NCBI RefSeq assembly: GCF_022045235.1
Contig: NW_027266343.1
Span: 27,156,001 to 27,220,000 of the forward strand
Source: Haliotis cracherodii
Taxonomy: Eukaryota
Reading direction: 5' to 3'
Length of the DNA stretch: 64,000 bases
Each line of letters starts with the position of its first letter. Position 1 is the stretch's first letter. Below the pieces are notes generated by a model, which did no database searches, was not told the DNA's origin, and saw nothing but the letters and a program-made list of their open reading frames with translations. Both the position numbers and the translations under genes were made by a program. Below are positions 15,176-63,528 of this stretch, one piece after another.

Positions 15176-16249
15176 ATGATAAGAAATATTGTTATCTTAT
15201 TGGGAGCCATGGTGATGGTATCCACGGTAACAGCGCAGCAACAAGGCATGACTCCATGCCAGACCTCCTTTTTACAAAGCATTAATACTTGCTTTCAGAA
15301 CAGTCAGCTACTTTTCGACAATTTTGTGTGGCTTTTTACAAATGGAACAAACGGACAAGCTCCCGACAACGCCGACACGATGAAGACTAATGCCTGCGCA
15401 AAGCAAGAACCATTGGTTCAGTGCGGTGTGGAGTTCATGAGGACATTGATCAACTCTACTTCGTGTGCAGCAACTCAAACACAACAGGATCAGAGACCCC
15501 TCATCGACAGACAGTTCCGTTCCCTCTTCGGATCTCTGGATGAGATGTGCGCACACCCATGTCGACGAACACTCACGGAGGATCTACGTCAGTGTTATGT
15601 TGACGCCAACCTTGACCCCACCCTCTTCCTCTCCAACTCCACCATGGGCCGCGGTGCCATCATCGGCACCACAGCGGATCAGGCTGACACTTATTGTAAG
15701 AACAAAGACTCTCTCGTTACATGCATGAAACAGAAGAGAGACGACTGTCCTGAATCTCCCATGATTCTCCGCGCCATCGGCCTTGACATTGAATCTATGG
15801 ACAAAGGTGTTGGAGTTCTGTGCGCTCACCCTGACGTGTACCTCAACGGCATCGACTGTTTCGCCGAGCCCACAGACGCTGTTGTGTCATGTCAGCAGAC
15901 AATGAACAAGAAGACCATGGAGTTGATGATGACGGCCCAACAAGAGAAACTCAGTGAGGATGATTTCTTCAACAGATTCTGTGACGTCCGTCTGGAACAC
16001 ATCAGCTGTGATCTGGAAGCCTGGATCAAAAAGAACAACAAGTCTTGCTCGAAAGCCGTCATTGGTTTAAGGACGGAGTTGGAGTGTGGTCTTCTTCCAG
16101 ACAACTGCGGTGCTACTCACAAACAGACCATTGACGAGGTCTGTCATCCTGGTAACTTCGAGACGGACCTGAGACCCAGTGGAGCTAGCTCCGCCTCGGC
16201 AACACTGACAGTTCTGCTTGTGTCGGTTTTGGTGACGTCACTGCACTGA
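15176..16249 (+). CDS. Copy 1: intronless cysteine-rich surface/secreted protein, 357 aa, signal peptide plus GPI-type tail; most diverged paralog
   Basis: Uninterrupted ATG-to-TGA ORF. Hydrophobic leader MIRNIVILLGAMVMVSTVTA. Same Cys skeleton as the other 7 copies. Tail SGASSASATLTVLLVSVLVTSLH. TATAAATA at 15105 and ATTAAA at 16443. Confidence 0.92.
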   Translation: MIRNIVILLGAMVMVSTVTAQQQGMTPCQTSFLQSINTCFQNSQLLFDNFVWLFTNGTNGQAPDNADTMKTNACAKQEPLVQCGVEFMRTLINSTSCAATQTQQDQRPLIDRQFRSLFGSLDEMCAHPCRRTLTEDLRQCYVDANLDPTLFLSNSTMGRGAIIGTTADQADTYCKNKDSLVTCMKQKRDDCPESPMILRAIGLDIESMDKGVGVLCAHPDVYLNGIDCFAEPTDAVVSCQQTMNKKTMELMMTAQQEKLSEDDFFNRFCDVRLEHISCDLEAWIKKNNKSCSKAVIGLRTELECGLLPDNCGATHKQTIDEVCHPGNFETDLRPSGASSASATLTVLLVSVLVTSLH

Positions 16250-16634
16250 GAACAAGACATTCTAATCGGTGTATATTCTGAATACCGGGGAAGCAGAAGG
16301 CTTTCTCACATGTCCCGATGATGTCTTTACCTTGACGGAGAAAGGGACCCTTTGCTTTATGTTTCGGGACAGTGGAGTGCACTAGAGCTGGCATGCGTAA
16401 AGATAACAACTGTATATATGAACAAGTTATATGTTAGTTATCATTAAATTTCTAAGAACTCGAGATTCTTTTATTTTTTTACTTTTAACTGTATTTCGGA
16501 AGGACTGACACCTTGGGCAGATGGAATAATCTCCCCGCTTGGAAATAGTGAAAAGCAGTGACTTTTCATCTGGACCTATAACACAATTAATTTAGGTATG
16601 GGCATACATATATGTATAATAAAATGTACACCGT

Positions 16635-21568: not shown

Positions 21569-24167
21569 TATATATTGTCATGCAACTCACTGTTGCAGTT
21601 GTAGTAGCATATCTATATATAAATATGCGAAACAATATGTAAAACTTCCACTGACCTCGTCCTATTGTTATCTTGTCGAGTTAAATCTCCAAAACGGGGA
21701 TGTTGTAATGTACCCGGGAATATTTAGGATACTCCAGGCCTGTTTGCTATGTAATGTCTAATAATATCCCGGTCGTTTTATAACTAAAACTTCCGTTCAG
21801 ATTGTAACATGTAATGAAATGTAAAATCGAATTACAAATGAGTGTACCACTAGGCTACGGAGGCGCTGATAAATCGCAGTGCCTTTGTCAAGAACCGTAT
21901 GGTTCTGGGCGCATGGAAAGTATGTTTGAAACATAAAAAATGTTAATAAACGCTGTTTTAAGTTTCATTTTGTTCGGTTTATAAGTTAGATAAAACAATT
22001 CTCCTGTTATTTTTAATGATATTTGAAACTCTTATCCTTGCTATTCGGGGCTTACGTCCCTCGGTTTTAAATATCATAAAAACCCTCGGACGTGCTTTAT
22101 CTTACACGTAAATGCAGTATATGTGATCAGATTGGAACGGTTCGTCTACAATGTGATGAAGGCCTGAGTGCCATTGACTTGCTTCAAAGCGAGAGCTTGC
22201 CTTTATATTCCATGTTTCCCAGTCTGTGATTTGCAGACTTTGGAATAGGTCTCTGTGGACACAAAATGTTCGAACTGGGCGATGCGCTGCAAGAGGTGTG
22301 GACAAGGCTCCCTCGAGTTGTCATTGGGAGATTGACTATTCCAACTGTTAATGTAAGTAGAAGAACACTGCCTTGACATGTAGGAAACAGATGAGAGGCG
22401 ACTGTCCGGAAGCTGCCACCACTCCCATGCCACGCCCTATAAACAAATGTTTGACCAATTGAGGGGGCATGACCCATTGTTGATCAAACGTTTATTTAAG
22501 ATTACCCACCCTGTCGGGACTGTCTTGTTGATTTTCATGTTACACCTGGTCCCTCCTATTCGTTATCCATCAGTCACCACCACCACTCGATACCTCGTTG
22601 TATTTCTGTAACCATGAGTCATGTCGAATATCCCCTCCAGGGTTTAAGAGTAAACGTCCCTGATCAGGATTGGGATAACCTGAAAGCGGCGTTAAACCAT
22701 ACTCACTAACTCACTCACTCAATCAATTAGTTTAGGACATGGACTTTATATCCACATGCAACTTCTTCCGTCCTCAAAAGGCCTCATGAAACATTGGACA
22801 ATCGTGTTTGTACACAACAAACAGGAATATATATATCACATGTAGAGCTATGAGGTATGTACGAGGTAGATCGCAAAGAACAATGAAAAACGAAGCGTGG
22901 TTTATTTCACTGTTCTATCATGACGTACTTTCTGGAGATTCGAACATTCGCTCGCAACTTGACGTTTTAAATTGAACGAAGTTGTTTTGAGAGGGAAGTG
23001 TCTACTGTGTTGTTTCCCTTAGATGTAGCTGAGCAACGTAGATAAATGCAATGGCCGAATGATCGCATCCCAAAGTGGGCGAGATATGACATTCGGTATA
23101 GGGACAAATAGGTACAGATAATCGACGTGAAACTTGAAACGTGAAACTCCGACATCGCCGAGATCCAATTTTATTCAGGGAGACATCATTATTTAAATAC
23201 GGGTAAACAGTTTCAAACCTTGTGCATAGTTTAACATCCTTGAATAGACTATACATAATGCTGATGTCTCATATACGAAATAAAACACTGCAGGGGAGAT
23301 AAACCACTACATTGTACGATAAACAATTTCCACTCGTCGTTTATTTCTTAAGTAGACCATACGCGGTTTCAGACGGAGCCGCTTACCCGTGCACATGCAT
23401 CATCAGGTACGACGCGTGAGTCGTGGATGGAGTGAGCGAATCTGTTCTGTGCAAGGCTATCCCCAGGTACTATTATCAAGGCATACCAAGGAGGGATTGC
23501 AGATAGTGAGTGTGTTGGGTTTAACGTCGACTTCACCTGTACTCAAGTTCTATCGTGACGTACCAGATTAATGCGGGGGGAATTCCCGAAATGACCCTTG
23601 TCGTGGACGTTACAATATGTATGAGACCCACGAGCACTGTCATGGAAAACCCCTAGGATACTAATCTGAACGAATAGGGATGCGAACGCAACAAAACTCG
23701 GTATTGTTTCCCAAAAGGTCGATCTTACGGCTCCAAGTAACAGCTTGCCACTTTTGTTTGCCCAGAACAGTACAAATAGGCTAAACTCCACTTGAAACAT
23801 AAAAAAACATTAGTTCTTCAAAACATGTTGAAATGAATATCTGTGTTTCTTTATCCACCTCTGTTGTCTTTTGTCGGTTTGTCATTCGTTCATCTTGTTT
23901 TCAAAATTCAGGTCATTTAACTTACAATACTACACTTTAACCTTGCTTGCTTATACAAAACTAGAGTCCATAATCGTTTGTATGATAGTCTCTCAAAAAC
24001 AGTAAAGACGGATGACAAAAATGACATGATAGCCATTATAAGTGTTAAAAAATATATTTCATAAAACAATTTACTAAATAATCATTATATTTAAACACAT
24101 GAAGTCTATGAGTAAATTATGGATTTGCTTTCTAAAAGCAAAGGATTCATCTCAAGTCACCATGATG

Positions 24168-25253
24168 TCAGTGAAAAGGGATCACATTTGGAATTATCCA
24201 AATTAGAAATGTACCAATTGTAGCTGAAGCTGTGGTGCCACTGTTAAAAGGTCTTGTGTCCTTCTTAAAGTTTTCATGGTGACAGACCTTGTCAATGGTC
24301 TGTTTATGCGTTGAACCACAGTTGTCTGGAAGAAGACCACACTCCAACTCCGTCCTCAAACCAATGACGGCATCCGCACAAGACTTGTGGTTCTTTTTGC
24401 TCCAGGCTTCCAGATCACAGCTGACGTGCTCCAGGCGGACGTCACAGAATCTGTTGAAGAACTGGTCCTCTTTGAGGTTCTGTTGTTCTGCCGTCATCAT
24501 CAACTCCATGGTCTTCTGGTTCATTATCTGCTGGCACGACACAACAGCGTCTGTGGGTTCCGCAAAACAGTCGATGCCGTTGAGGTACACGTCAGGGTGA
24601 GCGCACAGAACTCCAACACCTTTGTCCATAGATTCAATGTCAAGGCCGATGGCGCGGAGAATCATGGGAGATTCAGGACAGTCGTCTCTCTTCTGTTTCA
24701 TGCATGTCACGAGAGAGTCTTTGTTCTTACAGAAAATGTCAGCCTGATCCACTGTTGTGCCGATGATGGCACCGCGGCCCATGGTGGAGTTGGACAGGAA
24801 GAGGGTGGGGTCAAGGTTGGCGTCAACATAACACTGACGTAGATCCTCGGTGAGTGTTCGTCGACATGGGTGTGCGCACATCTCATCCAGAGATCCGAAG
24901 AGAGAACGGAACTGTCTGTCGATGAGGGGTCTCTGATCCTGTTGTGTTTGGCTCGGGGCACACATCGTAGAGTTGATCAATGTCCTCATGAACTCCACAC
25001 CGCACTGAAGCAACGCCTCCTGCTTGCTACAAGCATCTTGTCTGAACGCGTCGGGACTGTCGGGCGCTTGTCCGTTTGTTCCGTTTGACAATAAGTATAA
25101 GAAGTTATTAAAGTTCATCTGACTATTTTGAACACAGGTGTTGAGGTTTTGAACAAAGTTATTTTGACACGGGGTCATCCCTTGTTGACTTTGAGCCATT
25201 GTCATGGAAACAAGAACCATGGCAACACAACAAGACAATGTTTTTCCAAACAT
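24168..25253 (-). CDS. Copy 2: cysteine-rich signal-peptide/GPI-type protein, 361 aa
   Basis: First ATG is at 25253 (MFGKTLSCCVAMVLVSM); the ORF-track start at 25286 is not ATG. TATATAAA on the minus strand at 25303-25310. Paralogous to the other copies. Confidence 0.92.
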   Translation of the reverse strand: MFGKTLSCCVAMVLVSMTMAQSQQGMTPCQNNFVQNLNTCVQNSQMNFNNFLYLLSNGTNGQAPDSPDAFRQDACSKQEALLQCGVEFMRTLINSTMCAPSQTQQDQRPLIDRQFRSLFGSLDEMCAHPCRRTLTEDLRQCYVDANLDPTLFLSNSTMGRGAIIGTTVDQADIFCKNKDSLVTCMKQKRDDCPESPMILRAIGLDIESMDKGVGVLCAHPDVYLNGIDCFAEPTDAVVSCQQIMNQKTMELMMTAEQQNLKEDQFFNRFCDVRLEHVSCDLEAWSKKNHKSCADAVIGLRTELECGLLPDNCGSTHKQTIDKVCHHENFKKDTRPFNSGTTASATIGTFLIWIIPNVIPFH

Positions 25254-25302
25254 GCTGATGTACCGATTGAGAAATGTGAAAAACAAGTGAAGTCCAGGGT
25301 AC

Positions 25303-28026: not shown

Positions 28027-29124
28027 ATGTTTGGGAAGACAATGTCAGGTTGTATTGCCATGGTGCTTGTTTCCATGGCAACGGCTCAAAGTCAACAAGG
28101 AATGACCCCGTGTCAAAATAACTTTGTTCAAAACCTCAACACATGTGTTCAAAATAGTCAGATGGTCTTCAATAACTTCTTATACTTGTTGACAAACGGG
28201 ACAAACGGACAAGCGCCCGACAGTCCGGACACGTTCAGACAAGATGCTTGTAGCAAGCAGGAGGCGTTGCTTCTGTGCGGTGTTGAGTTCATGAGGACAT
28301 TGATCAACTCTACGATGTGTGCCCCGAGCCAAACACAACAGGATCAGAGACCCCTCATCGACAGACAGTTCCGTTCCCTCTTCGGATCTCTGGACGCGAT
28401 GTGCGCACACCCATGTCGCCGAACTCTCACCGAGGATCTACGTCAGTGTTATGTTGACGCCAACCTTGACCCCACCCTCTTCCTGTCCAACTCCACCATG
28501 GGCCGCGGCGCCATCATCGGGACCACAGCGGATCAGGCTGACATTTTCTGTAAGAACAAAGACTCTCTCGTGACATGCATGAAACAGAAGAGAGACGACT
28601 GTCCTGAATCTCCCATGATTCTCCGCGCCATCGGCCTTGACATTGAATCTATGGACAAAGGTGTTGGAGTTCTGTGCGCTCACCCTGACGTGTACCTCAA
28701 CGGCATCGACTGTTTTGCGGAACCCACAGACGCTGTTGTGTCGTGCCAGCAGACAATGAACCAGAAGACCATGGAGTTGATGATGACGGCAGAACAACAG
28801 AACCTCAAAGAGGACCAGTTCTTCAACAGATTCTGTGATGTCCGTCTGGAGCACGTCAGCTGTGATCTGGAAGCCTGGAGCAAAAAGAACCACAAGTCTT
28901 GTGCGGATGCCGTCATTGGATTGAGGACGGAGTTGGAGTGTGGTCTTCTTCCAGACAACTGTGGTGCTACACACAAACAGACAATTGACCAAGTCTGTCA
29001 CCATGAAAACTTTAAGAAGGACATGAGACCTTTTAACAGTGCCACAACATTTTCAATTGGGACAATGTCATGTTTTATGTTACGCTCTGTTCTCACTTAC
29101 TCTTTAAACTTCATACACATCTAG
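28027..29124 (+). CDS. Copy 3: cysteine-rich signal-peptide protein, 365 aa, with an altered C-terminal tail
   Basis: ATG at 28027 in atcaacATG context. TATAAATA at 27960 and TCAGTT at 27990. Head-to-head with copy 2. Confidence 0.92.
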   Translation: MFGKTMSGCIAMVLVSMATAQSQQGMTPCQNNFVQNLNTCVQNSQMVFNNFLYLLTNGTNGQAPDSPDTFRQDACSKQEALLLCGVEFMRTLINSTMCAPSQTQQDQRPLIDRQFRSLFGSLDAMCAHPCRRTLTEDLRQCYVDANLDPTLFLSNSTMGRGAIIGTTADQADIFCKNKDSLVTCMKQKRDDCPESPMILRAIGLDIESMDKGVGVLCAHPDVYLNGIDCFAEPTDAVVSCQQTMNQKTMELMMTAEQQNLKEDQFFNRFCDVRLEHVSCDLEAWSKKNHKSCADAVIGLRTELECGLLPDNCGATHKQTIDQVCHHENFKKDMRPFNSATTFSIGTMSCFMLRSVLTYSLNFIHI

Positions 29125-31087: not shown

Positions 31088-31355
31088 TGAGCGTTGTCAT
31101 GGAAACAAGAGCCATTGCAGTACATCATGACACAATTCTCCAAACCATGTTGAGATATGTTCATTCACTGGAGGGAAGTGGATGGCTGGCAAAACTTCAA
31201 GTTACTATTTATACTTGAATCTGGAATCTATTGTACAGAGGGTGTGACACCTTCACCTATGATGGTACAGAGTTTTAGCGTGATGGAGGCTATAGGTATA
31301 GTTACTTCCTGCACTGAATCTAAGATTGTTTATGGGCGTGTCAACTTCCATTATT
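31088..31355 (-). pseudogene. Truncated ninth paralog: promoter plus signal-peptide codons only
   Basis: The minus strand from ATG at 31148 reads MVWRIVS*CTAMALVSMTT (compare MFGRTLSCCVAMVLVSMTT), after which homology is lost. Upstream sequence aligns to the copy 2 promoter (TATAAATA 31206-31213, CAGGAAGT 31304-31311). Confidence 0.8.
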
Positions 31356-35331: not shown

Positions 35332-35520
35332 CACGTAACAATCAGGGAAGTTCACACGACGCGTCACAGTCTCACATGCAGTTGAGGAAGTGATTGCGAA
35401 ATGTTATCGACAGCACATAAAATCTTTGACTTCATTAGCGTAGTGTTCTCCGATTGGTGGAAGAGTCACACCTTCGGCCCGCTTATGATAAATAGTCTCT
35501 GTTGATCAGAGCCATCAGTT
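35332..35520 (+). promoter_or_regulatory. Promoter of copy 4 (repeated at 41680-41868, 47334-47522, 54940-55128, 62219-62407)
   Basis: GGGAAGTTCAC 35345, GAGGAAGT 35384, ATTGG 35453, GATAAATA at the TATA position 35487, TCAGTT 35515. Confidence 0.65.
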
Positions 35521-35555
35521 GTTTTTCACATTCCTCTTCCAGTAAGTACATCAAC

Positions 35556-36641
35556 ATGTTTGGAAGAACCTTGTCTTGTTGTGTTGCCATGGTGCTTGTT
35601 TCCATGACAACGGGTCAAGGTCAACAAGGGATGTCCCCGTGTCAAAATAACTTTGTTCAAAACCTCAACACATGTGTTCAAAATAGTCAGATGGACTTTA
35701 ATAACTTTTTATACTTGTTGACAAACGGGACAAATGGACAAGCGCCCGACAGTCCGGACACGTTCAGACAAGATGCTTGTAGCAAGCAGGAGGCGTTGCT
35801 TCAGTGCGGTGTGGAGTTCATGAGGACATTGATCAACTCTACGATGTGTGCCCCGAGCCAAACACAACAGGATCAGAGACCCCTCATCGACAGACAGTTC
35901 CGTTCCCTCTTCGGATCTCTGGACGCGATGTGCGCACACCCATGTCGCCGAACTCTCACCGAGGATCTACGTCAGTGTTATGTTGACGCCAACCTTGACC
36001 CCACCCTCTTCCTCTCCAACTCTACCATGGGCCGCGGTGCCATCATCGGGACCACAGCGGATCAGGCTGACATTTTCTGTAAAAACAAAGACTCTCTCGT
36101 GACATGCATGAAACAGAAGAGAGACGACTGTCCTGAATCTCCCATGATTCTCCGCGCCATCGGCCTTGACATTGAATCTATGGACAAAGGTGTTGGAGTA
36201 CTGTGCGCTCACCCTGACGTGTACCTCAACGGCATCGACTGTTTTGCGGAACCCACAGACGCTGTTGTGTCGTGCCAGCAGACAATGAACCAGAAGACCA
36301 TGGAGTTGATGATGACGGCAGAACAACAGAACCTCAAAGAGGACCAGTTCTTCAACAGATTCTGTGATGTCCGTCTGGAGCACGTCAGCTGTGATCTGGA
36401 AGCCTGGAGCAAAAAGAACCACAAGTCTTGTGCGGATGCCGTCATTGGTTTGAGGACGGAGTTGGAGTGTGGTCTTCTTCCAGACAACTGTGGTACAACT
36501 CATAAACAGACCATTGACAAGGTCTGTCACCATGAAAACTATAAGAAGGACATGAGACCGTTTAACAGTGGCACCATACTTTCAGCCACAATGGGGACAG
36601 TGTCATGTTTGTTCTTTCATGTTCTTTCTTCATTTCACTGA
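35556..36641 (+). CDS. Copy 4: cysteine-rich signal-peptide/GPI-type protein, 361 aa
   Basis: ATG at 35556; the ORF-track start at 35502 is TTG, upstream of the Inr-like TCAGTT. Intact ORF. AATAAA at 36737. Confidence 0.92.
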   Translation: MFGRTLSCCVAMVLVSMTTGQGQQGMSPCQNNFVQNLNTCVQNSQMDFNNFLYLLTNGTNGQAPDSPDTFRQDACSKQEALLQCGVEFMRTLINSTMCAPSQTQQDQRPLIDRQFRSLFGSLDAMCAHPCRRTLTEDLRQCYVDANLDPTLFLSNSTMGRGAIIGTTADQADIFCKNKDSLVTCMKQKRDDCPESPMILRAIGLDIESMDKGVGVLCAHPDVYLNGIDCFAEPTDAVVSCQQTMNQKTMELMMTAEQQNLKEDQFFNRFCDVRLEHVSCDLEAWSKKNHKSCADAVIGLRTELECGLLPDNCGTTHKQTIDKVCHHENYKKDMRPFNSGTILSATMGTVSCLFFHVLSSFH

Positions 36642-37087
36642 GTGTAGAACATTGTTAAAGAATGTCATGGTTCATAGTTTGTGATCACTTACAGATCTGT
36701 ACGTGTGTATATTCATATATAAGTTTTTTGTATCTGAATAAAACCCTACTTTTACACTTTGTTCTCAATACTTGAAATACATTAATAGAGCGTATATATT
36801 GTTTAACAATCCTTATGGGCTGTTCAGAACACCTGGGTGAAGGTGATGCGAACACTTTTTACAAGAAGGTATACATTTGTAATGTTAAGTTGACACGATA
36901 TACGACTTTTCCATTCAACGAGAGTTAGGTCACAAGACCGCGAAATTGAGGTTCGTAAGAGACTGTATTCTTGAAATGACCCGTACACTGACGGATACTT
37001 CCACATTCCCGGGGGAACCCCTGGGAATTCCCTAGCACGAATACAGAAGCGTTATCGCTGATTATTTAGACCCTTTAATTTTAAGGA

Positions 37088-38577: not shown

Positions 38578-40116
38578 CCATCACAATCTCCATCAGAAGC
38601 CCCACCACAATCCGCAACTCAATTCCCAGCACAATCCTCATCACAAGGCCAATCATAATCCCCATCACAATCTCCATCACAATCCCCATCACAATCCCCA
38701 TAACAAGGCCCATCACAATCCCAATAACAAGGTCCATCACAATCTCCATCACAACCCCATCACAATCCCAATTACAAAGCCCATCACAATCTCCATCACA
38801 ATCCCCATCACAATCCCCATAACAAGGCCCATTTCAATCCCAATCACAAGCCCCATCACAATCTCCCATCACAATCACAATCACAATCCCCATAACAAGG
38901 CCCATCACAATCTCCATCACAAGCCCCATCACAATCCCCATTACAACCCTATAACAAGGCTAATCTCAATCCCAATCATAAGCCCAATCACAATCTCCCA
39001 TCACAAGCCCCATCACAATCCCAATAACAAGGCCCATCACAAGACCCATAACAATCCCCATCACATTCCCCATAACAAGGCTTATCACAATTCCCATCAT
39101 AATCCCCATTACAACCCCAAACACAATCTGTAACTCAATTCCTATCACAATCCTCATAGCAAGGACCATCTCAATCCCCATCACAATCTCCATCACAATC
39201 CCCATAACAAGGCCCATCACAATCTCCATCACAATCCCGATCACAATCCCCATAATAAGGCCCATCTCAATCCCAATCACAAGCCCTATCACAATCACCC
39301 ATCACAAGCCCCATCACAATCCCCATAACAAGGCCCATCACAATCTCCATCACAAGCCTCATCACAATCCCTATAACAAGGCCAATCTCAATCCCAATCA
39401 CAAGCCCAACCACAATCTCCCATCAAAAGCCCCATTACAATCCCCATAACAATCCCCATCACAATCCCCATAACAAGGCCTATCACAAGCCCCATCATAA
39501 TCCCCATCATAATCCCCATCACAATCCCAAACACAATCAGTAACTCAATTCCCATCACAATCCTCATAGCAAGGCCCATCTCAATCCCCATCACAATCTC
39601 CATCACAATTCCCATAACAAGCCCCATCACAATCCCGATAACAAGGCCTATCACAATCCCCATTACAAGGCCATCACAATCTCCCATCACAATCCCCATC
39701 ACAATCCCCATAACAAGGCCAATCATAATCCCCATAACAAGCCCCATCACAATCCCCATAACAAGGCCCATCACAATCTCCCATCACAAGCCCCATCGCA
39801 ATCACAATAACAAGGCCCATCACAATCTCTCATCACAATCCCCATCACAATCCCCATTACAAGCCCCATCACAATCCCCATAACAAGGCCCATCTCAATC
39901 CCCCTAACAAGGCCCATCACAATCTCCATCACAATCCCCATCACAATCCCTATAACAAGGCCAATCTCAATCCCAATCTCAATCCCAATCACAAGCCCCA
40001 TCACAATCTCCCATCACAATCCCCATAACAATCCCCGTCACAATCCCCATCACAAGCCCCATCACAAGCCCCGTCACAATCTCCATAACAAGGCCAAACT
40101 CAATCCCAATCACAAG
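38578..40116. repeat. 12-bp minisatellite (CCATCACAATCC / CCATCACAAGCC / CCATAACAAGGC variants), unit 4
   Basis: Visible tandem array of about 1.5 kb. Confidence 0.97.
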
Positions 40117-41903: not shown

Positions 41904-42989
41904 ATGTTTGGAAGAACCTTGTCTTGTTGTGTTGCCATGGTGCTTGTTTCCATGACAACGGGTCAAGATCAACAAGGGATGTCCCCGTGTCAAAATAACT
42001 TTGTTCAAAACCTCAACACATGTGTTCAAAATAGTCAGATGGACTTTAATAACTTTTTATACTTGTTGACAAACGGGACAAATGGACAAGCGCCCGACAG
42101 TCCGGACACGTTCAGACAAGATGCTTGTAGCAAGCAGGAGGCGTTGCTTCAGTGCGGTGTGGAGTTCATGAGGACATTGATCAACTCTACGATGTGTGCC
42201 CCGAGCCAAACACAACAGGATCAGAGACCCCTCGTCGACAGACAGTTCCGTTCCCTCTTCGGATCTCTGGACGCAATGTGCGCACACCCATGTCGCCGAA
42301 CTCTCACCGAGGATCTACGTCAGTGTTATGTTGACGCCAACCTTGACCCCACCCTCTTCCTCTCCAACTCCACCATGGGCCGCGGTGCCATCATCGGAAC
42401 CACAGCGGATCAGGCTGACATTTTCTGTAAGAACAAAGACTCTCTCGTGACATGCATGAAACAGAAGAGAGACGACTGTCCTGAATCTCCCATGATTCTC
42501 CGCGCCATCGGCCTTGACATTGAATCTATGGACAAAGGTGTTGGAGTACTGTGCGCTCACCCTGACGTATACCTCAACGGCATCGACTGTTTTGCGGAAC
42601 CCACAGACGCTGTTGTGTCGTGCCAGCAGATAATGAACCAGAAGACCATGGAGTTGATGATGACGGCAGAACAACAGAACCTCCAAGAGGACCAGTTCTT
42701 CAACAGATTCTGTGACGTCCGTCTGGAGCACGTCAGCTGTGATCTGGAAGCCTGGAGCAAAAAGAACCACAAGTCTTGTGCGGATGCCGTCATTGGTTTG
42801 AGGACGGAGTTGGAGTGTGGTCTTCTTCCAGACAACTGTGGTACAACTCATAAACAGACCATTGACAAGGTCTGTCACCATGAAAACTATAAGAAGGACA
42901 TGAGACCGTTTAACAGTGGCACCATACTTTCAGCCACAATGGGGACAGTGTCATGTTTGTTCTTTCATGTTCTTTCTTCATTTCACTGA
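41904..42989 (+). CDS. Copy 5: cysteine-rich signal-peptide/GPI-type protein, 361 aa
   Basis: Intact ORF, near-identical to copy 4, with the same promoter and 3' UTR. Confidence 0.92.
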   Translation: MFGRTLSCCVAMVLVSMTTGQDQQGMSPCQNNFVQNLNTCVQNSQMDFNNFLYLLTNGTNGQAPDSPDTFRQDACSKQEALLQCGVEFMRTLINSTMCAPSQTQQDQRPLVDRQFRSLFGSLDAMCAHPCRRTLTEDLRQCYVDANLDPTLFLSNSTMGRGAIIGTTADQADIFCKNKDSLVTCMKQKRDDCPESPMILRAIGLDIESMDKGVGVLCAHPDVYLNGIDCFAEPTDAVVSCQQIMNQKTMELMMTAEQQNLQEDQFFNRFCDVRLEHVSCDLEAWSKKNHKSCADAVIGLRTELECGLLPDNCGTTHKQTIDKVCHHENYKKDMRPFNSGTILSATMGTVSCLFFHVLSSFH

Positions 42990-47557: not shown

Positions 47558-48643
47558 ATGTTTGGAAGAACCTTGTCTTGTTGTGTTGCCATGGTGCTTG
47601 TTTCCATGACAACGGGTCAAGATCAACAAGGGATGTCCCCGTGTCAAAATAACTTTGTTCAAAACCTCAACACATGTGTTCAAAATAGTCAGATGGACTT
47701 TAATAACTTTTTATACTTGTTGACAAACGGGACAAACGGACAAGCGCCCGACAGTCCCGACGCGTTCAGACAAGATGCTTGTGGCAAGCAGGAGGCGTTG
47801 CTTCAGTGCGGTGTGGAGTTCATGAGGACATTGATCAACTCTACGATGTGTGCCCCGAGCCAAACACAACAGGATCAGAGACCCCTCGTCGACAGACAGT
47901 TCCGTTCCCTCTTCGGATCTCTGGACGCAATGTGCGCACACCCATGTCGCCGAACTCTCACCGAGGATCTACGTCAGTGTTATGTTGACGCCAACCTTGA
48001 CCCCACCCTCTTCCTCTCCAACTCCACCATGGGCCGCGGTGCCATCATCGGGACCACAGCGGATCAGGCTGACATTTTCTGTAAGAACAAAGACTCTCTC
48101 GTGACATGCATGAAACAGAAGAGAGACGACTGTCCTGAATCTCCCATGATTCTCCGCGCCATCGGCCTTGACATTGAATCTATGGACAAAGGTGTTGGAG
48201 TACTGTGCGCTCACCCTGACGTGTACCTCAACGGCATCGACTGTTTTGCGGAACCCACAGACGCTGTTGTGTCGTGCCAGCAGATAATGAACCAGAAGAC
48301 CATGGAGTTGATGATGACGGCAGAACAACAGAACCTCCAAGAGGACCAGTTCTTCAACAGATTCTGTGACGTCCGTCTGGAGCACGTCAGCTGTGATCTG
48401 GTAGCCTGGAGCAAAAAGAACCACAAGTCTTGTGCGGATGCCGTCATTGGTTTGAGGACGGAGTTGGAGTGTGGTCTTCTTCCAGACAACTGTGGTACAA
48501 CTCATAAACAGACCATTGACAAGGTCTGTCACCATGAAAACTATAAAACGGACATGAGACCGTTTAACAGTGGCACCATACTTTCAGCCACAATGGGGAC
48601 AGTGTCATGTTTGTTCTTTCATGTTCTTTCTTCATTTCACTGA
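47558..48643 (+). CDS. Copy 6: cysteine-rich signal-peptide/GPI-type protein, 361 aa
   Basis: Intact ORF with private changes DLVAW and YKTD. Confidence 0.92.
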   Translation: MFGRTLSCCVAMVLVSMTTGQDQQGMSPCQNNFVQNLNTCVQNSQMDFNNFLYLLTNGTNGQAPDSPDAFRQDACGKQEALLQCGVEFMRTLINSTMCAPSQTQQDQRPLVDRQFRSLFGSLDAMCAHPCRRTLTEDLRQCYVDANLDPTLFLSNSTMGRGAIIGTTADQADIFCKNKDSLVTCMKQKRDDCPESPMILRAIGLDIESMDKGVGVLCAHPDVYLNGIDCFAEPTDAVVSCQQIMNQKTMELMMTAEQQNLQEDQFFNRFCDVRLEHVSCDLVAWSKKNHKSCADAVIGLRTELECGLLPDNCGTTHKQTIDKVCHHENYKTDMRPFNSGTILSATMGTVSCLFFHVLSSFH

Positions 48644-52915: not shown

Positions 52916-53357
52916 CCATCACAAGCCCCATAACAAGGCCCATCACAAGCCCCATCACAATACCCATTACAAGGCACATCACAACCCCCATCACAAGCCA
53001 CATAACAAGGCCCATCACAATCCCCATCACAAGCCCCATCACAAGGCCCATCACAAGCCCCATAACAAGGCCCATCACAATCCTGATCACAAGCCCCATC
53101 ACAATCCCCATAACAAGGCACATCACAATCCCCATCACAAGCCCCATCACAACCCCCATTACAAGCCCCATAACAAGGCACATCACAATCCCCATCACAA
53201 GCCCCATAACAAGGCCCATCACAAGCCCCATCACAAGGCCCATCACAATCCCCATAACAAGGCACATCACAATCCTGATCACAAGCCCCATCACAATCCC
53301 CATCACAAGCCCCATCACTATCCCCATAACGAGGCCTATCTCCATCGCAATCACAAG
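52916..53357. repeat. 12-bp minisatellite, unit 6, block b
   Basis: Second block, separated from block a by an extra copy of the unit's first ~230 bp. Confidence 0.95.
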
Positions 53358-55163: not shown

Positions 55164-56249
55164 ATGTTTGGAAGAACCTTGTCTTGTTGTGTTGCCATGG
55201 TGCTTGTTTCCATGACAACGGGTCAAGGTCAACAAGGGATGTCCCCGTGTCAAAATAACTTTGTTCAAAACCTCAACACATGTGTTCAAAATAGTCAGAT
55301 GGTCTTCAATAACTTTTTATACTTGTTGACAAACGGGACAAATGGACAAGCGCCCGACAGTCCCGACGCGTTCAGACAAGATGCTTGTGGCAAGCAGGAG
55401 GCGTTGCTTCAGTGCGGTGTGGAGTTCATGAGGACATTGATCAACTCTACGATGTGTGCCCCGAGCCAAACACAACAGGATCAGAGACCCCTCATCGACA
55501 GACAGTTCCGTTCCCTCTTCGGATCTCTGGATGAGATGTGCGCACACCCATGTCGCCGAACTCTCACCGAGGATCTACGTCAGTGTTATGTTGACGCCAA
55601 CCTTGACCCCACCCTCTTCCTCTCCAACTCCACCATGGGCCGCGGTGCCATCATCGGGACCACAGCGGATCAGGCTGACATTTTCTGTAAGAACAAAGAC
55701 TCTCTCGTGACATGCATGAAACAGAAGAGAGACGACTGTCCTGAATCTCCAATGATTCTCCGCGCCATCGGCCTTGACATTGAATCTATGGACAAAGGTG
55801 TTGGAGTTCTGTGCGCTCACCCTGACGTGTACCTCAACGGCATCGACTGTTTTGCGGAACCCACAGACGCTGTTGTGTCGTGCCAGCAGACAATGAACCA
55901 GAAGACCATGGAGTTGATGATGACGGCAGAACAACAGAACCTCCAAGAGGACCAGTTCTTCAACAGATTCTGTGACGTCCGTCTGGAGCACGTCAGCTGT
56001 GATCTGGAAGCCTGGAGCAAAAAGAACCACAAGTCTTGTGCGGATGCCGTCATTGGTTTGAGAACGGAGTTGGAGTGTGGTCTTCTTCCAGACAACTGTG
56101 GTACAACTCATAAACAGACCATTGACAAGGTCTGTCACCATGAAAACTATAAGAAGGACATGAGACCTTTTAACAGTGGCACCATACTTTCAGCCACAAT
56201 GGGGACAGTGTCATGTTTGTTCTTTCATGTTCTTTCTTCATTTCACTGA
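55164..56249 (+). CDS. Copy 7: cysteine-rich signal-peptide/GPI-type protein, 361 aa
   Basis: Intact ORF, near-identical to copies 4-6 and 8. Confidence 0.92.
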   Translation: MFGRTLSCCVAMVLVSMTTGQGQQGMSPCQNNFVQNLNTCVQNSQMVFNNFLYLLTNGTNGQAPDSPDAFRQDACGKQEALLQCGVEFMRTLINSTMCAPSQTQQDQRPLIDRQFRSLFGSLDEMCAHPCRRTLTEDLRQCYVDANLDPTLFLSNSTMGRGAIIGTTADQADIFCKNKDSLVTCMKQKRDDCPESPMILRAIGLDIESMDKGVGVLCAHPDVYLNGIDCFAEPTDAVVSCQQTMNQKTMELMMTAEQQNLQEDQFFNRFCDVRLEHVSCDLEAWSKKNHKSCADAVIGLRTELECGLLPDNCGTTHKQTIDKVCHHENYKKDMRPFNSGTILSATMGTVSCLFFHVLSSFH

Positions 56250-59130: not shown

Positions 59131-60636
59131 CCATCACAATCTCCATCACAAGCCCCACCACAATCCGCAACTCAATTCCCATCACAATCCTCATCACAAG
59201 GCCAATCATAATCCCCATCACAATCTCTCATAACAAGCCCCATCACAATCCCCATATCAAGGCCCATCACAAGCCCCATCATAATCCCCATCATAATCCC
59301 TATCACAATCTCTCATCAAAATCCCCATAACAAGGCCTATCACAAGCCCTATCACAATCCCCATAACAATCCCTATAACAAGGCCTATCACAAGCCCCAT
59401 CATAATCCCCATCATAATCCCAATCACAATCTCTCATCAAAATCCCCATAACAAGGCCTATCACAAGCCCCATCATAATCCCCATCATAATCCCCATCAC
59501 AAGCCCCACCACAATCCGTAACTCAATTCCAATCACAATCCTCATCACAAGGCCCATCTCAATCCCCATCACAATCTCCATCACAATCCCCGTAACAAGG
59601 CCCATCACAATCCCCATAACAAGGCCCATCACAATCTTCCATCACAAGCCCCATCACAATCCCAATAACAAGGCCCATCACAAGCCCCATCACAATCTCC
59701 ATCACAATCCCCATAACAAGGCCCATCATAATCCCCATAACAAGGCCCATCACAATCTCCCATCACAAGTCCCATTACAATCCCAATAACAAGGCCCATC
59801 ACAATCACCATCACAAGGCCATCACAATCCCTATCACAAGCCCCATCACAAGCCCCATCACAATCTCCCATCACAAGCTCCATCAAAATCCCCATTACAA
59901 GGCCCATCACAATCCCCATCACAAGCCCCATCAAAAGGCCCATAACAAGGCCCATCACAATCTCCATCACAAGCCCCATTACAAGGCACATCACAATCCC
60001 CATGACAAGGCACATCACAAGCCCCATCACAAGCCCCATCACAACCCCCATCACAAGCCCCATCACAAGGCACATCACAATCCCCATCACAAGCCCCATC
60101 ACAAGGCCCATCACAAGCCCCATCACAATCCCCATCACAAGCCCCATCACAATCCCAATAACAAGGCCCATCACAATCACCATCACAAGGCCCCATCACA
60201 ATCCCCATCACAAGCCCCATCACAATCTCCCATCACAAGCTCCATCACAATCCCCATAACAAGGCCCATCACGATCCCCATTACAATCCCCATCACAAGC
60301 CCCATCACAATCCCCATCACAAGCCCCATCACAAGCTCCATCACAATCTCCCATCACAAGCTCCATCACAATCCCCATAACAAGGCCCATCACGATCCCC
60401 ATCACAATCCCCATCACAATCCCCATCACAAGCCCCATCACAAGCCCGATAACAAGGCACATCACAATCCCCACCACAAGCCCCATCACAAGGCCCATAA
60501 CAAGCCCCATAACAAGGCACATCACAATCCCCATCACAAGCCCCATAACGAGGCCCATCACAAGCCCCATCACATTCCCCATCACAAGCCCCATCACTAT
60601 CCCCATAACGAGGCCTATCTCAATCGCAATCACAAG
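59131..60636. repeat. 12-bp minisatellite, unit 7
   Basis: Same array, about 1.5 kb. Confidence 0.97.
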
Positions 60637-62442
60637 CAGTGAGTGAGTGAGTATGGTCTTTGTTCGAGGAATATATCCGTGAGTGTCAGCAGAAATGAAC
60701 ACTAGCCTATACATCTACAGCCACGCAAAGACGATATCAAGTATCTTTACAGATACCTATTATTTAAAACAATATAAATATACTATATTATGACTCGCGT
60801 ACTTTCTCATCTCGTCACGTCACTTTTCTGTTTGGTCTACCTTTAGAATACAGTACTACAAACTTTTCAAACACGTCACAGTAACCTGTGACGTAATTCG
60901 TAGTATTTTGTTGCCAGTCACACCGTCGAAACAATGCCCTGTGGCGTCAGGGGTCATCGAGGGTGCATAAGCTAGTTTATGAAAGCACTTTTATTTTCAA
61001 TAGTTAGTTGGTTTCATGTTTTTCAGATAGGTGTCAAGTCTGATTAGTTAACTGAGGCAACTCACGTGAAAAGTATGGGGATACGAGAAGTTGGAACTAA
61101 TAATTAGTAACAGCGGCCAGAAGGTTAGTAAACAGCGAATTTACTATCCTGGTAGATTTCAGGAAGATGCTGAAGATTGGTAATATCACTTATTCAATAA
61201 GTATAATACCTTAAAAATGAAAACACTGTTATTTTTGTGTTTCTATCCTAAACGGAATGCACATTTGGTGTGTTCTATCTGAACATGTTTAGGGTCTAAA
61301 CACATGAAATGAGTTATCGCCTTATAGCATATAAACGCCACCTAAACACAGCATCCCCATAATCATAAACATGTACCATTTATTCACGCTTAAACATGTT
61401 TAGAATGTAAATATGTTAAAAAAGTGTACGTCATCAGGCTATGAGTCAAATATGAATGTGATGTATAATAATATATATATTGAAATTAGATGTGCAAATC
61501 TGATTCACAGACACTTGCATAACATATACACCATAAGGACTTGGTAACAATATTAACAATAAAAATGTACAAGCAAACTAAGCTTATAGTGACTAGTAAA
61601 ATTACAACTAGTGACGAAAACAGTCTCCGTAGAACAGGGCGTAGTGTGAGAAAAATACAAATCTAGAGGTTGCAGGTGCGAATTCCATCTGAAATCTTTG
61701 AATTCATCAATGTGTTATTGCTGTATGCCAAATAGTATTTCTCTCATACAGGCAGCTGATGATGAAAGTACATCTGATTACAACTTAACCTTTTTTAGTT
61801 AGTGACCATAGGCTACTGATCAGTAAAATCTACTAACATGTTAGTGTCTGATGGGTCAGTAACTTAGTTAGAAAACTTTACAAACTCTTTCTGTCAGTGT
61901 TGTTGACAAGAAGCATGATCACAGCCCGCGAGTCTGTGACCTTAACCTTTACTGTTATGTTTCCATAGTTCCTGTCAACCCAAATTGTCCTTCTACTTTG
62001 AATATGTGCAGATTGTAGATGTTAAAGTATACATACTGTAGGAAACTGCATCACGACAAATAGGTATAACAGCCTGCAGCATACACATCAATATAATCTG
62101 TTGATATTTGGTAACTCCTTCAATGATCGGATTGTATAATGGTCCATCAATTAAGGGTGTTTAAAACATATGACGGGTAACAACAACACAAGGCTTAGGC
62201 CGGAGTACCCCCGGGGTACACGTAACAATCAGGGAAGTTCACACGACGCGTCACAGTCTCACATGCAGTTGAGGAAGTGATTGCGAAATGTTATCGACAG
62301 CACATAAAATCTTTGACTTCATTAGCGTAGTGTTCTCCGATTGGTGGAAGAGTCACACCTTTGGCCCGCTTATGATAAATAGTCTCTGTTGATCAGAGCC
62401 ATCAGTTGTTTTACACATTCCTCTTCCAGTAAGTACATCAAC

Positions 62443-63528
62443 ATGTTTGGAAGAACCTTGTCTTGTTGTGTTGCCATGGTGCTTGTTTCCATGACAACGG
62501 GTCAAGGTCAACAAGGGATGTCCCCGTGTCAAAATAACTTTGTTCAAAACCTCAACACATGTGTTCAAAATAGTCAGATGGACTTTAATAACTTTTTATA
62601 CTTGTTGACAAACGGGACAAATGGACAAGCGCCCGACAGTCCCGACGCGTTCAGACAAGATGCTTGTGGCAAGCAGGAGGCGTTGCTTCAGTGCGGTGTG
62701 GAGTTCATGAGGACATTGATCAACTCTACGATGTGTGCCCCGAGCCAAACACAACAGGATCAGAGACCCCTCATCGACAGACAGTTCCGTTCCCTCTTCG
62801 GATCTCTGGATGAGATGTGCGCACACCCATGTCGCCGAACTCTCACCGAGGATCTACGTCAGTGTTATGTTGACGCCAACCTTGACCCCACCCTCTTCCT
62901 CTCCAACTCCACCATGGGCCGCGGTGCCATCATCGGGACCACAGCGGATCAGGCTGACATTTTCTGTAAGAACAAAGACTCTCTCGTGACATGCATGAAA
63001 CAGAAGAGAGACGACTGTCCTGAATCTCCAATGATTCTCCGCGCCATCGGCCTTGACATTGAATCTATGGACAAAGGTGTTGGAGTACTGTGCGCTCACC
63101 CTGACGTGTACCTCAACGGCATCGACTGTTTTGCGGAACCCACAGACGCTGTTGTGTCGTGCCAGCAGACAATGAACCAGAAGACCATGGAGTTGATGAT
63201 GACGGCAGAACAACAGAACCTCCAAGAGGATCAGTTCTTCAACAGATTCTGTGACGTCCGTCTGGAGCACGTCAGCTGTGATCTGGAAGCCTGGAGCAAA
63301 AAGAACCACAAGTCTTGTGCGGATGCCGTCATTGGTTTGAGGACGGAGTTGGAGTGTGGTCTTCTTCCAGACAACTGTGGTACAACTCATAAACAGACCA
63401 TTGACAAGGTCTGTCACCATGAAAACTATAAGAAGGACATGAGACCTTTTAACAGTGGCACCATACTTTCAGCCACAATGGGGACAGTGTCATGTTTGTT
63501 CTTTCATGTTCTTTCTTCATTTCACTGA
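62443..63528 (+). CDS. Copy 8: cysteine-rich signal-peptide/GPI-type protein, 361 aa
   Basis: Intact ORF; differs from copy 7 at QMDF versus QMVF. Confidence 0.92.
   Translation: MFGRTLSCCVAMVLVSMTTGQGQQGMSPCQNNFVQNLNTCVQNSQMDFNNFLYLLTNGTNGQAPDSPDAFRQDACGKQEALLQCGVEFMRTLINSTMCAPSQTQQDQRPLIDRQFRSLFGSLDEMCAHPCRRTLTEDLRQCYVDANLDPTLFLSNSTMGRGAIIGTTADQADIFCKNKDSLVTCMKQKRDDCPESPMILRAIGLDIESMDKGVGVLCAHPDVYLNGIDCFAEPTDAVVSCQQTMNQKTMELMMTAEQQNLQEDQFFNRFCDVRLEHVSCDLEAWSKKNHKSCADAVIGLRTELECGLLPDNCGTTHKQTIDKVCHHENYKKDMRPFNSGTILSATMGTVSCLFFHVLSSFH

What the first reader, a model, noticed from the sequence alone, without database searches (positions are those of the whole stretch)
15176..63528. Expanding cluster of at least 8 intronless genes for an uncharacterised cysteine-rich, probably GPI-anchored surface protein
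Seen: eight intact single-exon ORFs and one pseudogene in ~48 kb, in mixed orientation and then a fresh tandem array that continues past the window. All eight have a signal peptide, invariant cysteines, N-glycosylation sequons (NGT, NST x2) and a hydrophobic tail with no cytoplasmic domain. All stay open while every neighbouring transposon is decayed, which implies selection. I do not recognise the protein. Inference: a birth-and-death, copy-number-variable cell-surface family of the kind seen for invertebrate immune, allorecognition, gamete or mucus proteins. The layout, with genes separated by unstable short repeats, recalls the sea urchin Transformer (185/333) clusters in architecture only, not by homology.
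Basis: partly seen in the sequence, partly recalled or inferred. Interest (0 to 1): 0.85.

Follow-up and report, generated by a model that had tools for sequence, protein, structure and literature searches.

The report
Amplified retrogene family for abalone surface glycoprotein
Black abalone carries at least ten intact intron-free genes for a conserved, probably membrane-anchored glycoprotein found in all molluscs; they descend from a processed copy of a multi-exon gene, and the copies make more of the same protein rather than different versions.

Summary
The window (Haliotis cracherodii, C80:27156001-27220000) has eight intact single-exon genes of 357-365 aa. Each has a signal peptide, 20 conserved cysteines, conserved sequons and a C-terminus that looks like a GPI-attachment signal. 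I found no full pseudogene, only two short relics. The young array has five intact units, and a sixth, truncated unit lies just beyond the window. Two more intact copies follow.

The family is not private or diversifying. It occurs in gastropods, bivalves and a chiton, and is annotated only as "uncharacterized". All copy pairs give dN/dS of 0.06-0.37, and the mature proteins of the array are about 98-99% identical.

The new point is the origin. Three paralogues on contig C16 share five internal CDS introns at identical positions, and these mirror a three-module repeat. The paralogue called gene B here is sister to the intronless clade (98-99% support). The two clusters lie on different scaffolds in three Haliotis species. 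The cluster is therefore most likely an old retrogene that gained a conserved CRE/CCAAT/TATA promoter. It was then amplified in tandem, separately in H. asinina and H. cracherodii.

Assemblies that look like RNA place colinear contigs on the gene alone. The closest known family is DUF1397/DUF19, on weak evidence. Function remains unknown.

The parts
15176..16249 (+). Copy c1, 357 aa. It is an old, divergent member, and its centre has been homogenised with the other copies.
   Evidence: dS against c4 is saturated in codons 1-80 but about 0.2 in codons 81-320.
24168..25253 (-). Copy c2, 361 aa. It is identical to database protein P0003.
28027..29124 (+). Copy c3, 365 aa. It has the weakest C-terminal hydrophobic tail, with an Arg inside it.
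35556..36641 (+). Copy c4, 361 aa, the first gene of the young tandem array.
   Evidence: Contigs of the RNA-like runs X1 and X5 lie colinearly on 35527-36808 and 35642-36746.
41904..42989 (+). Copy c5, 361 aa, an array gene.
47558..48643 (+). Copy c6, 361 aa, an array gene.
55164..56249 (+). Copy c7, 361 aa, an array gene.
62443..63528 (+). Copy c8, 361 aa, an array gene.
35427..35495 (+). Core promoter of c4: CRE-like TGACTTCA (35427-35434), inverted CCAAT box GATTGG (35452-35457) and TATA box ATAAATAG (35488-35495, 68 nt before the ATG). The same order of the three elements is kept upstream of c1-c9.
   Evidence: The first RNA-like contig starts at 35527.
36737..36742 (+). AATAAA polyadenylation signal of c4, about 95 nt after the stop codon.
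   Evidence: RNA-like contigs end at 36746 (X5) and 36808 (X1).
38578..40115 (.). 12-bp minisatellite (CCATCACAATCC)n that closes array unit 1. Equivalent arrays lie at 45051-45727, 51303-53327 and 59131-60637. It is a likely substrate for unequal crossing-over.
22241..22418 (+). Short decayed relic of a family member, matching codons ~147-195.
   Evidence: tblastn E 0.001-0.002, blastn E 1.7e-8
31092..31148 (-). Short relic of the 5' end of the CDS (nt 3-57 of c4).
   Evidence: blastn E 7.5e-7

Best explanation
The cluster is a retrogene-derived, tandemly amplified gene family. It encodes a glycoprotein family found across molluscs.

The protein (inferred from sequence and a model):
- It has a signal peptide and a mature N-terminal Gln.
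- It has three homologous ~95-aa all-helical modules stapled by disulfides, each with the pattern C-x10-C-x29-34-C-x8-C-x7-13-C.
- It has three conserved N-glycosylation sequons.
- Its C-terminus has the make-up of a GPI-attachment signal: a basic residue, a run of small residues, a spacer, then 12-20 hydrophobic residues and the end of the protein.

Origin (inferred from shown gene structures and trees):
- The ancestral gene is multi-exon. It survives as three tandem paralogues (A, B, C) on contig C16.
- The introns of A, B and C mirror the module repeat.
- Before H. asinina and H. cracherodii split, a processed mRNA of the gene-B lineage was reverse-transcribed and inserted on another chromosome.
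- The copy came to be driven by a CRE/CCAAT/TATA promoter and was duplicated at the DNA level together with that promoter.

Later history (shown by divergence and trees):
- One sub-lineage has since been amplified in tandem, separately in different Haliotis species. In H. cracherodii this probably happened by unequal crossing-over at the 12-bp minisatellite that ends each unit. It gave five intact units and one truncated unit.
- Gene conversion homogenises the core of the copies.
- Purifying selection keeps the mature protein almost invariant.

Function (inferred):
- The amplification raises the dose of one product rather than creating variants.
- The product is most likely an abundant glycoprotein, GPI-anchored on an epithelial surface or shed from it.
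- Its biochemical role is unknown.
For: Intact copies.

Multi-exon paralogues on C16. They share five internal CDS introns at identical alignment columns, with phases 2,1,2,1,2 and GT..AG ends. A further intron lies within the first ~7 codons. Introns 1, 3 and 5 fall just after the third Cys of each module. Introns 2 and 4 fall at the module borders.

Internal repeat: hhalign of module 1 against module 2 gives probability 90.8% and E 1.2e-6. Module 3 aligns more weakly (E 0.006-0.012), with four of its five cysteines in register against module 1.

Sister relation: gene B orthologues of three species are sister to the intronless clade (98/96 and 99/97 support). Patella and Gigantopelta fall outside.

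Different scaffolds for the two clusters:
- H. cracherodii: 60.1 Mb and 14.1 Mb
- H. rufescens: 43.8 Mb and 41.2 Mb
- H. asinina: 52.9 Mb and 49.7 Mb

Species-specific clades: four H. asinina copies with consecutive accessions group together (100/100), and c4-c8 group together (100/97). c9 pairs with H. rufescens LOC124111689.

Selection: dN/dS is 0.06-0.37 for all 45 pairs. dN is close to 0 in codons 81-320. The C-terminal tail has dN of 0.22-0.58.

Promoter: the three elements are conserved in c1-c9.

Transcription: in runs X1 and X5 contigs lie only on the gene, colinear and without joints. The DNA-like run X15 also covers the flanks.

Protein features: GPI-like tails occur across the family, from bivalves to gastropods. 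The AlphaFold model is all-helical, with mean pLDDT 81.6.
Against: - No poly(A) remnant or target-site duplication was looked for or seen. The insertion is old.
Ancestral intron presence therefore rests on the three Haliotis paralogues alone.
- That runs X1 and X5 are RNA is the tool's guess, and contigs cannot give expression levels.
- GPI anchoring rests on a rule-of-thumb reading of the tails. The tails of c3 and c4-c8 are only weakly hydrophobic, with best 12-residue Kyte-Doolittle means of 1.4-1.8. Those copies may be secreted instead.
- Array copy number is taken from one assembly and is not checked against long reads.
Confidence: 0.72

Rival explanations
1. This is the first reader's view: a birth-and-death, diversifying cell-surface family used for immunity, allorecognition or gamete recognition. 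The copies would be kept because they differ.
For: - Copy number turns over, with species-specific clades.
- One unit is truncated and short relics remain.
- Unstable minisatellites lie between the genes.
- The protein has surface-protein features.
Against: - dN/dS is 0.06-0.37 in every pair.
- The array proteins differ at 1-8 of 361 residues, and most of those lie in or near the signal peptide.
- The core has dN close to 0 even between copies whose dS is 0.13-0.17.
- The family is conserved across mollusc classes.
- Gene conversion homogenises the copies rather than diversifying them.
Confidence: 0.07
2. The five near-identical units c4-c8 are an assembly artefact. A single gene, or a few genes, would have been over-expanded in the assembly.
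For: Units are 98-99% identical and contain long minisatellites, which are hard to assemble.
Against: - Units differ in length (5654-7606 bp). They also carry private substitutions that group as (c5,c6) and (c7,c8).
- The array ends in a structurally distinct truncated unit.
- H. asinina has its own run of 4-5 adjacent copies, and H. rufescens has fused multi-copy gene models.
- In the RNA-like runs the gene breaks into many short contigs. That is expected when several near-identical paralogues are present.
Confidence: 0.06
3. The intronless state is ancestral, and the C16 genes gained their introns later. Alternatively, the introns were lost one by one without retroposition.
For: Outgroup gene structures were not read. 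No poly(A) tract or target-site duplication is documented.
Against: - Paralogues A, B and C are only 34-52% identical over their exons, so they are old duplicates. Yet they share all five internal intron positions and phases, and the introns follow the module repeat.
- B is sister to the intronless clade. Intron gain would therefore need identical gains in three lineages.
- Every CDS intron is missing at once, and the locus lies on another scaffold.
Confidence: 0.07
4. The products are soluble secreted proteins of haemolymph, mucus or the gut lumen, like insect DUF1397 proteins. They would not be GPI-anchored surface proteins.
For: - DUF1397 relatives are reported from centipede venoms and from insect peritrophic-matrix proteomes (titles found). 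The family is also known as the 27 kDa haemolymph protein family (automatic cluster name).
- The tails of c3 and c4-c8 are weakly hydrophobic, and the tail evolves fast.
Against: The pattern of small residues, spacer and hydrophobic end is kept across the family, from bivalves to gastropods, even though the sequence itself is not conserved. That is the behaviour of a working GPI signal. No member has a cytoplasmic tail.
Confidence: 0.2

Closest known systems
DUF1397 (Pfam PF07165), the insect 27 kDa haemolymph glycoprotein family, also reported in centipede venom and insect peritrophic matrix
   Same: - Both are secreted, cysteine-rich proteins built from repeated modules, and neither has a known function.
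- hmmscan hits PF07165 in at least five members of the mollusc family. One hit is above the gathering score: P0027, 32.9 bits against a cut-off of 25.7.
- Those hits lie on the same segments that the mollusc family profile recognises as its modules.
- Language-model feature similarity is 0.91.
   Different: - The abalone proteins themselves give no Pfam hit, even at E = 1.
- The mollusc proteins have three modules and a GPI-like tail.
- No profile-profile test against a DUF1397 alignment could be run.
DUF19 (Pfam PF01579, T20D4.11-like domain of nematodes)
   Same: - UniRef names the Lottia, Pinctada and Potamilus members 'DUF19 domain-containing protein'.
- The best language-model neighbour cluster is a nematode DUF19 cluster, at 0.92.
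   Different: The current Pfam copy gives no PF01579 hit for any of the ten members scanned at E up to 10. The name is a database label, not something I tested.
Amplified retrogene families, that is, processed copies that gain a promoter and are then duplicated in tandem
   Same: - All parental CDS introns are missing.
- The locus lies on a different scaffold from the parent.
- The parental lineage is identified by phylogeny.
- Later DNA-level tandem duplication carried the promoter along.
   Different: The insertion hallmarks, a poly(A) tract and target-site duplication, are not documented. The event predates the split of H. asinina and H. cracherodii.
Sea-urchin Transformer (Sp185/333) clusters
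   Same: Both are small intron-poor genes in mixed orientation, separated by simple repeats, with variable copy number.
   Different: There is no homology. The abalone copies show no mosaic of sequence elements and no diversification (dN/dS 0.06-0.37, near-identical mature proteins). They are under homogenising conversion and purifying selection.
GFR-alpha / GAS1 (Pfam PF02351), GPI-anchored receptors with three cysteine-rich helical domains
   Same: The general layout is shared: signal peptide, three helical cysteine-rich domains and a GPI signal.
   Different: - No PF02351 hit appears at any threshold.
- No GFR-alpha chain appears in the listed rows of the Foldseek or VIA-align searches.
- Each abalone module has a five-cysteine core. 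From my own knowledge, the GFR-alpha domain has ten.

Membership tests
Retrogene (processed gene copy) | It lacks all introns that interrupt the parental CDS. | tested here: met
   Five internal introns are shared by C16 genes A, B and C. A sixth lies near the start codon. The ten C80 copies are continuous ORFs across all these positions.
Retrogene (processed gene copy) | A parental lineage can be identified, and the copy is nested beside it in a tree. | tested here: met
   Gene B orthologues are sister to the intronless clade (98/96 and 99/97). Patella and Gigantopelta fall outside.
Retrogene (processed gene copy) | It lies at a genomic site unlinked to the parent. | tested here: met
For H. 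cracherodii, C16 is a 14-Mb contig, so an unlinked position is likely but not proven.
Retrogene (processed gene copy) | A poly(A) tract and target-site duplications flank the insertion. | not tested
   The insertion predates the H. asinina / H. cracherodii split. Flanks of c1 and c4 no longer align outside the CDS. No search for these hallmarks was made.
GPI-anchored protein | It has an N-terminal signal peptide. | tested here: met
   A hydrophobic h-region is present (best 9-residue Kyte-Doolittle mean 2.2-3.1). It is followed by small residues and a conserved Gln in all ten copies and in nearly all full-length relatives. This is a heuristic reading. SignalP was not available.
GPI-anchored protein | It has a C-terminal attachment signal: a cluster of small residues at the attachment site, a polar spacer and a terminal hydrophobic stretch, with no cytoplasmic tail. 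| tested here: met
   The pattern is present in most full-length family members from bivalves to gastropods. It is weakest in c3 and c4-c8. This is a heuristic reading. NetGPI was not available.
GPI-anchored protein | The protein is released by PI-PLC, or the lipid anchor is detected. | not testable with these tools
   This needs an experiment.
DUF1397 (PF07165) | It matches the Pfam model at or above the gathering score. | tested here: inconclusive
   The window proteins give no hit. The distant family member P0027 gives 32.9 bits against a cut-off of 25.7. P0017, P0048 and two members of alignment A2 hit below the cut-off. The hits lie on the family's own modules.
DUF19 (PF01579) | It matches the Pfam model. 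| tested here: not met
   None of ten diverse members hits PF01579 at E up to 10. Only UniRef names and language-model similarity point to this family.
Transformer (185/333)-like diversifying immune family | The copies are diversified, with an excess of non-synonymous change or a mosaic of sequence elements. | tested here: not met
   dN/dS is 0.06-0.37, and the mature array proteins are nearly identical.
GFR-alpha / GAS1 (PF02351) | It matches the GDNF-receptor domain model or fold. | tested here: not met
   There is no Pfam hit. No such chain appears in the listed rows of the fold searches.

The most novel reading that the evidence does not exclude
The proteins define an undescribed class of GPI-anchored surface glycoproteins found across molluscs. 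Each is built from three disulfide-stapled helical modules that are homologous to arthropod DUF1397 and nematode DUF19. That would make this one ancient extracellular module shared across protostomes.

In abalone a retrocopy would have become the main highly expressed locus. Its copy number would be re-amplified separately in each species because dose matters on an exposed epithelium, for example against gut or mantle pathogens. Copy number would then vary among individuals and could affect fitness.
Probability: 0.15. Interest if true: 0.6.

Novelty: new member of a known kind. Interest (0 to 1): 0.4.

Why it matters
- It is a clean case of a retrogene that gained a promoter, kept its function under purifying selection for the whole history of a genus, and then served as seed for repeated tandem amplification.
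- It gives a first description of a conserved mollusc protein family that has no Pfam model and no known function: three-module structure, an exon pattern that mirrors the modules, a GPI-like tail, and a likely link to DUF1397/DUF19.
- For the endangered black abalone it marks a locus that probably varies in copy number and encodes a surface glycoprotein that appears to be transcribed. This can be checked in population data.
- It corrects an attractive but unsupported reading that this is an immune-diversity family.

Tried and rejected
Searches that gave nothing useful:
- Pfam on the window proteins: no hit, even at E = 1.
- PDB sequence search with one protein and with a 34-sequence profile: nothing below E 0.3.
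- Foldseek against PDB: no match at E <= 0.001.
- VIA-align against about 48,000 chains: best Z 7.4. All hits are generic helical bundles (spectrin repeat, BAG and Bro1 domains), which is within the noise range for helical models. Module 2 was barely tested.
- Rfam on the window: nothing.
- Structure search in the ESM Atlas: no model is held for either query.
- The search for homologous proteins with the 34-sequence profile at E up to 10: only mollusc proteins, and no arthropod or nematode relative. The tool pre-filters candidates by shared words, so this says little.
- Literature: no paper mentions the gene identifiers I tried. The DUF1397 and DUF19 papers give no function.

Gene structures in other species could not be read.
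I used the database proteins P0158, P0008, P0136 and P0015 instead. Joined translations were made only inside local scripts, to place the introns.

Readings I rejected:
- Diversifying immune-type family.
- GFR-alpha/GAS1 membership.
- The 419-aa ORF at 17409-18668 and the 150-190-aa minus-strand ORFs inside the 12-bp arrays as genes. They are translations of minisatellites.


Full report
**Where the window comes from**

The window is G000:C80:27156001-27220000. The contig is 60,096,789 bases long.

**The observation**

tblastn with copy 4 finds exactly these eight and nothing else at E <= 1e-3. The TTG starts printed by the ORF lister are artefacts. Each gene starts at an ATG (MFG[KR]T... or MIRN...). 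The CDSs are:

| Copy | Coordinates | Strand |
|---|---|---|
| c1 | 15176-16249 | + |
| c2 | 24168-25253 | - |
| c3 | 28027-29124 | + |
| c4 | 35556-36641 | + |
| c5 | 41904-42989 | + |
| c6 | 47558-48643 | + |
| c7 | 55164-56249 | + |
| c8 | 62443-63528 | + |

The proteins are 357-365 aa long. Each has a hydrophobic N-terminal signal, 20 cysteines kept across relatives, three conserved sequons (NGT, NST, NST) and an uncharged hydrophobic C-terminus.

c4-c8 form a head-to-tail array. ATG-to-ATG spacings are 6348, 5654, 7606 and 7279 bp. Gene regions are 98.2-98.8% identical. Each unit ends in a (CCATCACAATCC)n minisatellite of 0.7-2 kb.

Two details of the observation do not hold:
- There is no full pseudogene in the window. 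Only a ~180-nt relic at 22241-22418 and a ~55-nt relic at 31092-31148 remain.
- The array continues past the window for one truncated unit only. That unit keeps the upstream region and the first ~318 nt of the ORF, then a rearrangement follows (C80:27225185-27226707).

Two further intact, older copies follow: c9 at C80:27239902-27240990(-) and c10 at 27244256-27245290(+). The locus therefore holds ten intact genes.

**What the protein is**

Pfam, PDB sequence search, Foldseek and an exhaustive VIA-align search give no specific match. An AlphaFold2 model built on 12 sequences has mean pLDDT 81.6 and is entirely helical.

The cysteines repeat three times in the pattern C-x10-C-x29-34-C-x8-C-x7-13-C. 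Profile-profile alignment supports the repeat. Module 1 against module 2 gives probability 90.8% and E 1.2e-6. Module 3 aligns more weakly (E 0.006-0.012), with four of its five cysteines in register against module 1.

An exhaustive profile search finds 124 cluster representatives. The named ones are all molluscs:
- Gastropods: Haliotis, Gigantopelta, Patella, Lottia, Pomacea, Nucella, Littorina, Babylonia, Bradybaena, Lymnaea, Bulinus and Plakobranchus.
- Bivalves: Saccostrea, Pinctada, Mizuhopecten, Potamilus, Sinanodonta and Solemya.
- A chiton: Liolophura.

All are annotated as uncharacterised or hypothetical. Bivalve members carry extra copies of module 1 in series.

Across the family the C-terminus keeps one pattern while its sequence drifts freely. 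The pattern is a basic residue, a run of small residues (SGA, SSA, GSG), a short spacer, then 12-20 hydrophobic residues and the end of the protein. That is how a working GPI-attachment signal behaves. I take anchoring as likely but untested. The tails of c3 and c4-c8 are the weakest.

**Closest known families**

Five family members hit Pfam DUF1397. One is above the gathering score: Pinctada P0027, 32.9 bits against 25.7. These hits fall on the very segments that the mollusc profile recognises as its own modules.

UniRef calls three members 'DUF19 domain-containing'. Language-model features put nematode DUF19 and arthropod DUF1397 clusters nearest, at 0.91-0.92. The current Pfam DUF19 model hits none of ten members.

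I read this as a probable distant superfamily link, not as membership. Neither family has a known function. The DUF1397 papers found concern centipede venoms, insect peritrophic matrix and silkworm tissues.

**Why the genes have no introns**

A search of the whole genome finds the family in pieces on contig C16. There are three tandem genes, A, B and C. They correspond to XP_071110004.1, to XP_071110061.1, and to the orthologue of H. asinina XP_067659123.1.

Guided by these database proteins, I placed the splice sites. All three genes have five internal CDS introns with GT..AG ends and phases 2,1,2,1,2, at identical alignment columns. The first ~7 codons are not contiguous with the next exon, so one more intron lies there.

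Introns 1, 3 and 5 fall directly after the third cysteine of modules 1, 2 and 3. Introns 2 and 4 fall at the module borders. The exon pattern therefore records an old triplication of a two-exon cassette.

A, B and C are only 34-52% identical over their exons, so they are old duplicates. The shared introns are therefore ancestral.

In maximum-likelihood trees the gene B orthologues of three Haliotis species form a clade. That clade is sister to all intronless genes, with Gigantopelta and Patella outside (98/96, 99/97). The two clusters sit on different scaffolds in H. cracherodii, H. rufescens and H. asinina.

Every CDS intron is missing at once, the locus is unlinked to the parent, and the clade is nested next to an intron-bearing parent. 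Together these are the signature of retroposition. I did not look for a poly(A) tract or target-site duplication. The event predates the H. asinina / H. cracherodii split, because c10 pairs with H. asinina XP_067657502.1 (100/99).

**What happened afterwards**

Copies c1 to c9 share a promoter layout upstream of the ATG: a CRE-like TGAC(G/T)TCA, an inverted CCAAT box (GATTGG) and a TATA box 55-71 nt before the ATG. Later duplications were therefore DNA-level and carried the promoter along.

The tree shows three old lineages: c10, c1 and an 'array' lineage. Inside the array lineage:
- Four H. asinina genes with consecutive accessions form their own clade (100/100).
- c4-c8 form their own clade (100/97).
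- c9 pairs with H. rufescens LOC124111689 (95/89).

Amplification, or homogenisation, has therefore happened separately in different species.

Synonymous divergence falls into three classes:

| Comparison | dS |
|---|---|
| Within c4-c8 | 0.018-0.046 |
| Between c2, c3, c9 and the array | 0.12-0.17 |
| To c1 and c10 | 0.43-0.60 |

Along the gene the pattern is mosaic. c1 against c4 is saturated in codons 1-80 but has dS of about 0.2 in codons 81-320.

**Selection**

All 45 pairs give dN/dS of 0.06-0.37. In 40-codon windows the mature core has dN of 0-0.02 between c2, c3, c9 and c4. The C-terminal tail has dN of 0.22-0.28 in those same pairs, and up to 0.58 against c1. The signal-peptide window also changes faster than the core.

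The array proteins differ at only a few residues. This is purifying selection on one product, not diversification. The amplification is best read as a change in dose.

For c4-c8 themselves the flanks are as similar as the coding sequence. Their open frames alone therefore prove little. The argument for selection rests on the older copies.

**Transcription**

No listed run is on record as RNA. Several runs have small assemblies of 47-123 Mb, which the tool guesses to be RNA, and these hold the gene.

Laid on 34000-38500, the contigs of X1 and X5 lie only on 35527-36808 and 35642-36746. They are colinear with the genome and have no joints, and their unique flanks are empty. The DNA-like run X15 also covers the flanks.

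This extent fits a start about 30 nt after the TATA box, a 5' UTR of about 35 nt, and the AATAAA at 36737-36742. It is consistent with an unspliced mRNA of about 1.25 kb in related abalone samples. It is not proof, and it gives neither tissue nor expression level.

**Verdict**

The family is conserved across molluscs and is not a private, diversifying one. The best-supported account is an old retrogene of the gene-B lineage that has been amplified in tandem again and again. It encodes a glycoprotein that is probably GPI-anchored and appears to be transcribed, and its biochemical role is unknown.

Retrogene families, tandem arrays and uncharacterised lineage-wide proteins are all familiar kinds of thing. 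I therefore rate it a new member of a known kind, of moderate interest.

**Limits**

- Copy number rests on one assembly.
- GPI anchoring and signal cleavage are heuristic readings.

Noticed in passing
window 16635-18911: A 33-bp minisatellite of about 69 copies, 89% matching, lies directly downstream of c1. The 419-aa 'ORF' at 17409-18668 (MGPIRASDSRA...) is only its translation, not a gene.
   Followed up: partly
window 37088-37164: This is a very abundant short repeat. In all four runs its contig depth is 100 to 10,000 times that of the neighbouring sequence. Hundreds of contigs break at its edges, and the sequence flanking it in other copies reads GGTTCGATTCCC, which resembles a tRNA B-box. 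It is probably a tRNA-derived SINE, present in every array unit.
   Followed up: no
window 20873-21235 (+): A decayed fragment of a DDE_3 (Tc1/mariner-type) transposase (Pfam E 7.3e-6, below the gathering score). It is the only transposon remnant I verified.
   Followed up: partly
L009 (C80:27242756-27246790), just upstream of the c10 ATG: c10 lacks the CRE/CCAAT/TATA promoter shared by c1-c9. Instead it has a splice-acceptor-like TTTCAG 9 nt before its ATG. It may use an upstream non-coding exon and a different promoter.
   Followed up: no
G000:C16:6226788-6256634 (L027, L031, L028): This is the parental cluster of three tandem multi-exon paralogues, A, B and C. Exon pairs of 282-285 nt with symmetrical phases (2 to 2) encode one module each. 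That is a textbook trace of internal duplication of an exon cassette.
   Followed up: yes
database proteins P0150 (700 aa), P0154 (901 aa), P0145 (786 aa): NCBI gene models in H. cracherodii, H. rufescens and H. asinina fuse two or more neighbouring array copies into one long protein. These are probably annotation artefacts caused by the near-identical tandem genes.
   Followed up: no
bivalve proteins P0017, P0014, P0018, P0027: Bivalve relatives are longer (579-995 aa). They carry two to four extra copies of module 1 before a full three-module unit, followed by a further partial unit (modules 2-3, or module 2 alone in P0027). Module number is therefore variable in this family.
   Followed up: partly
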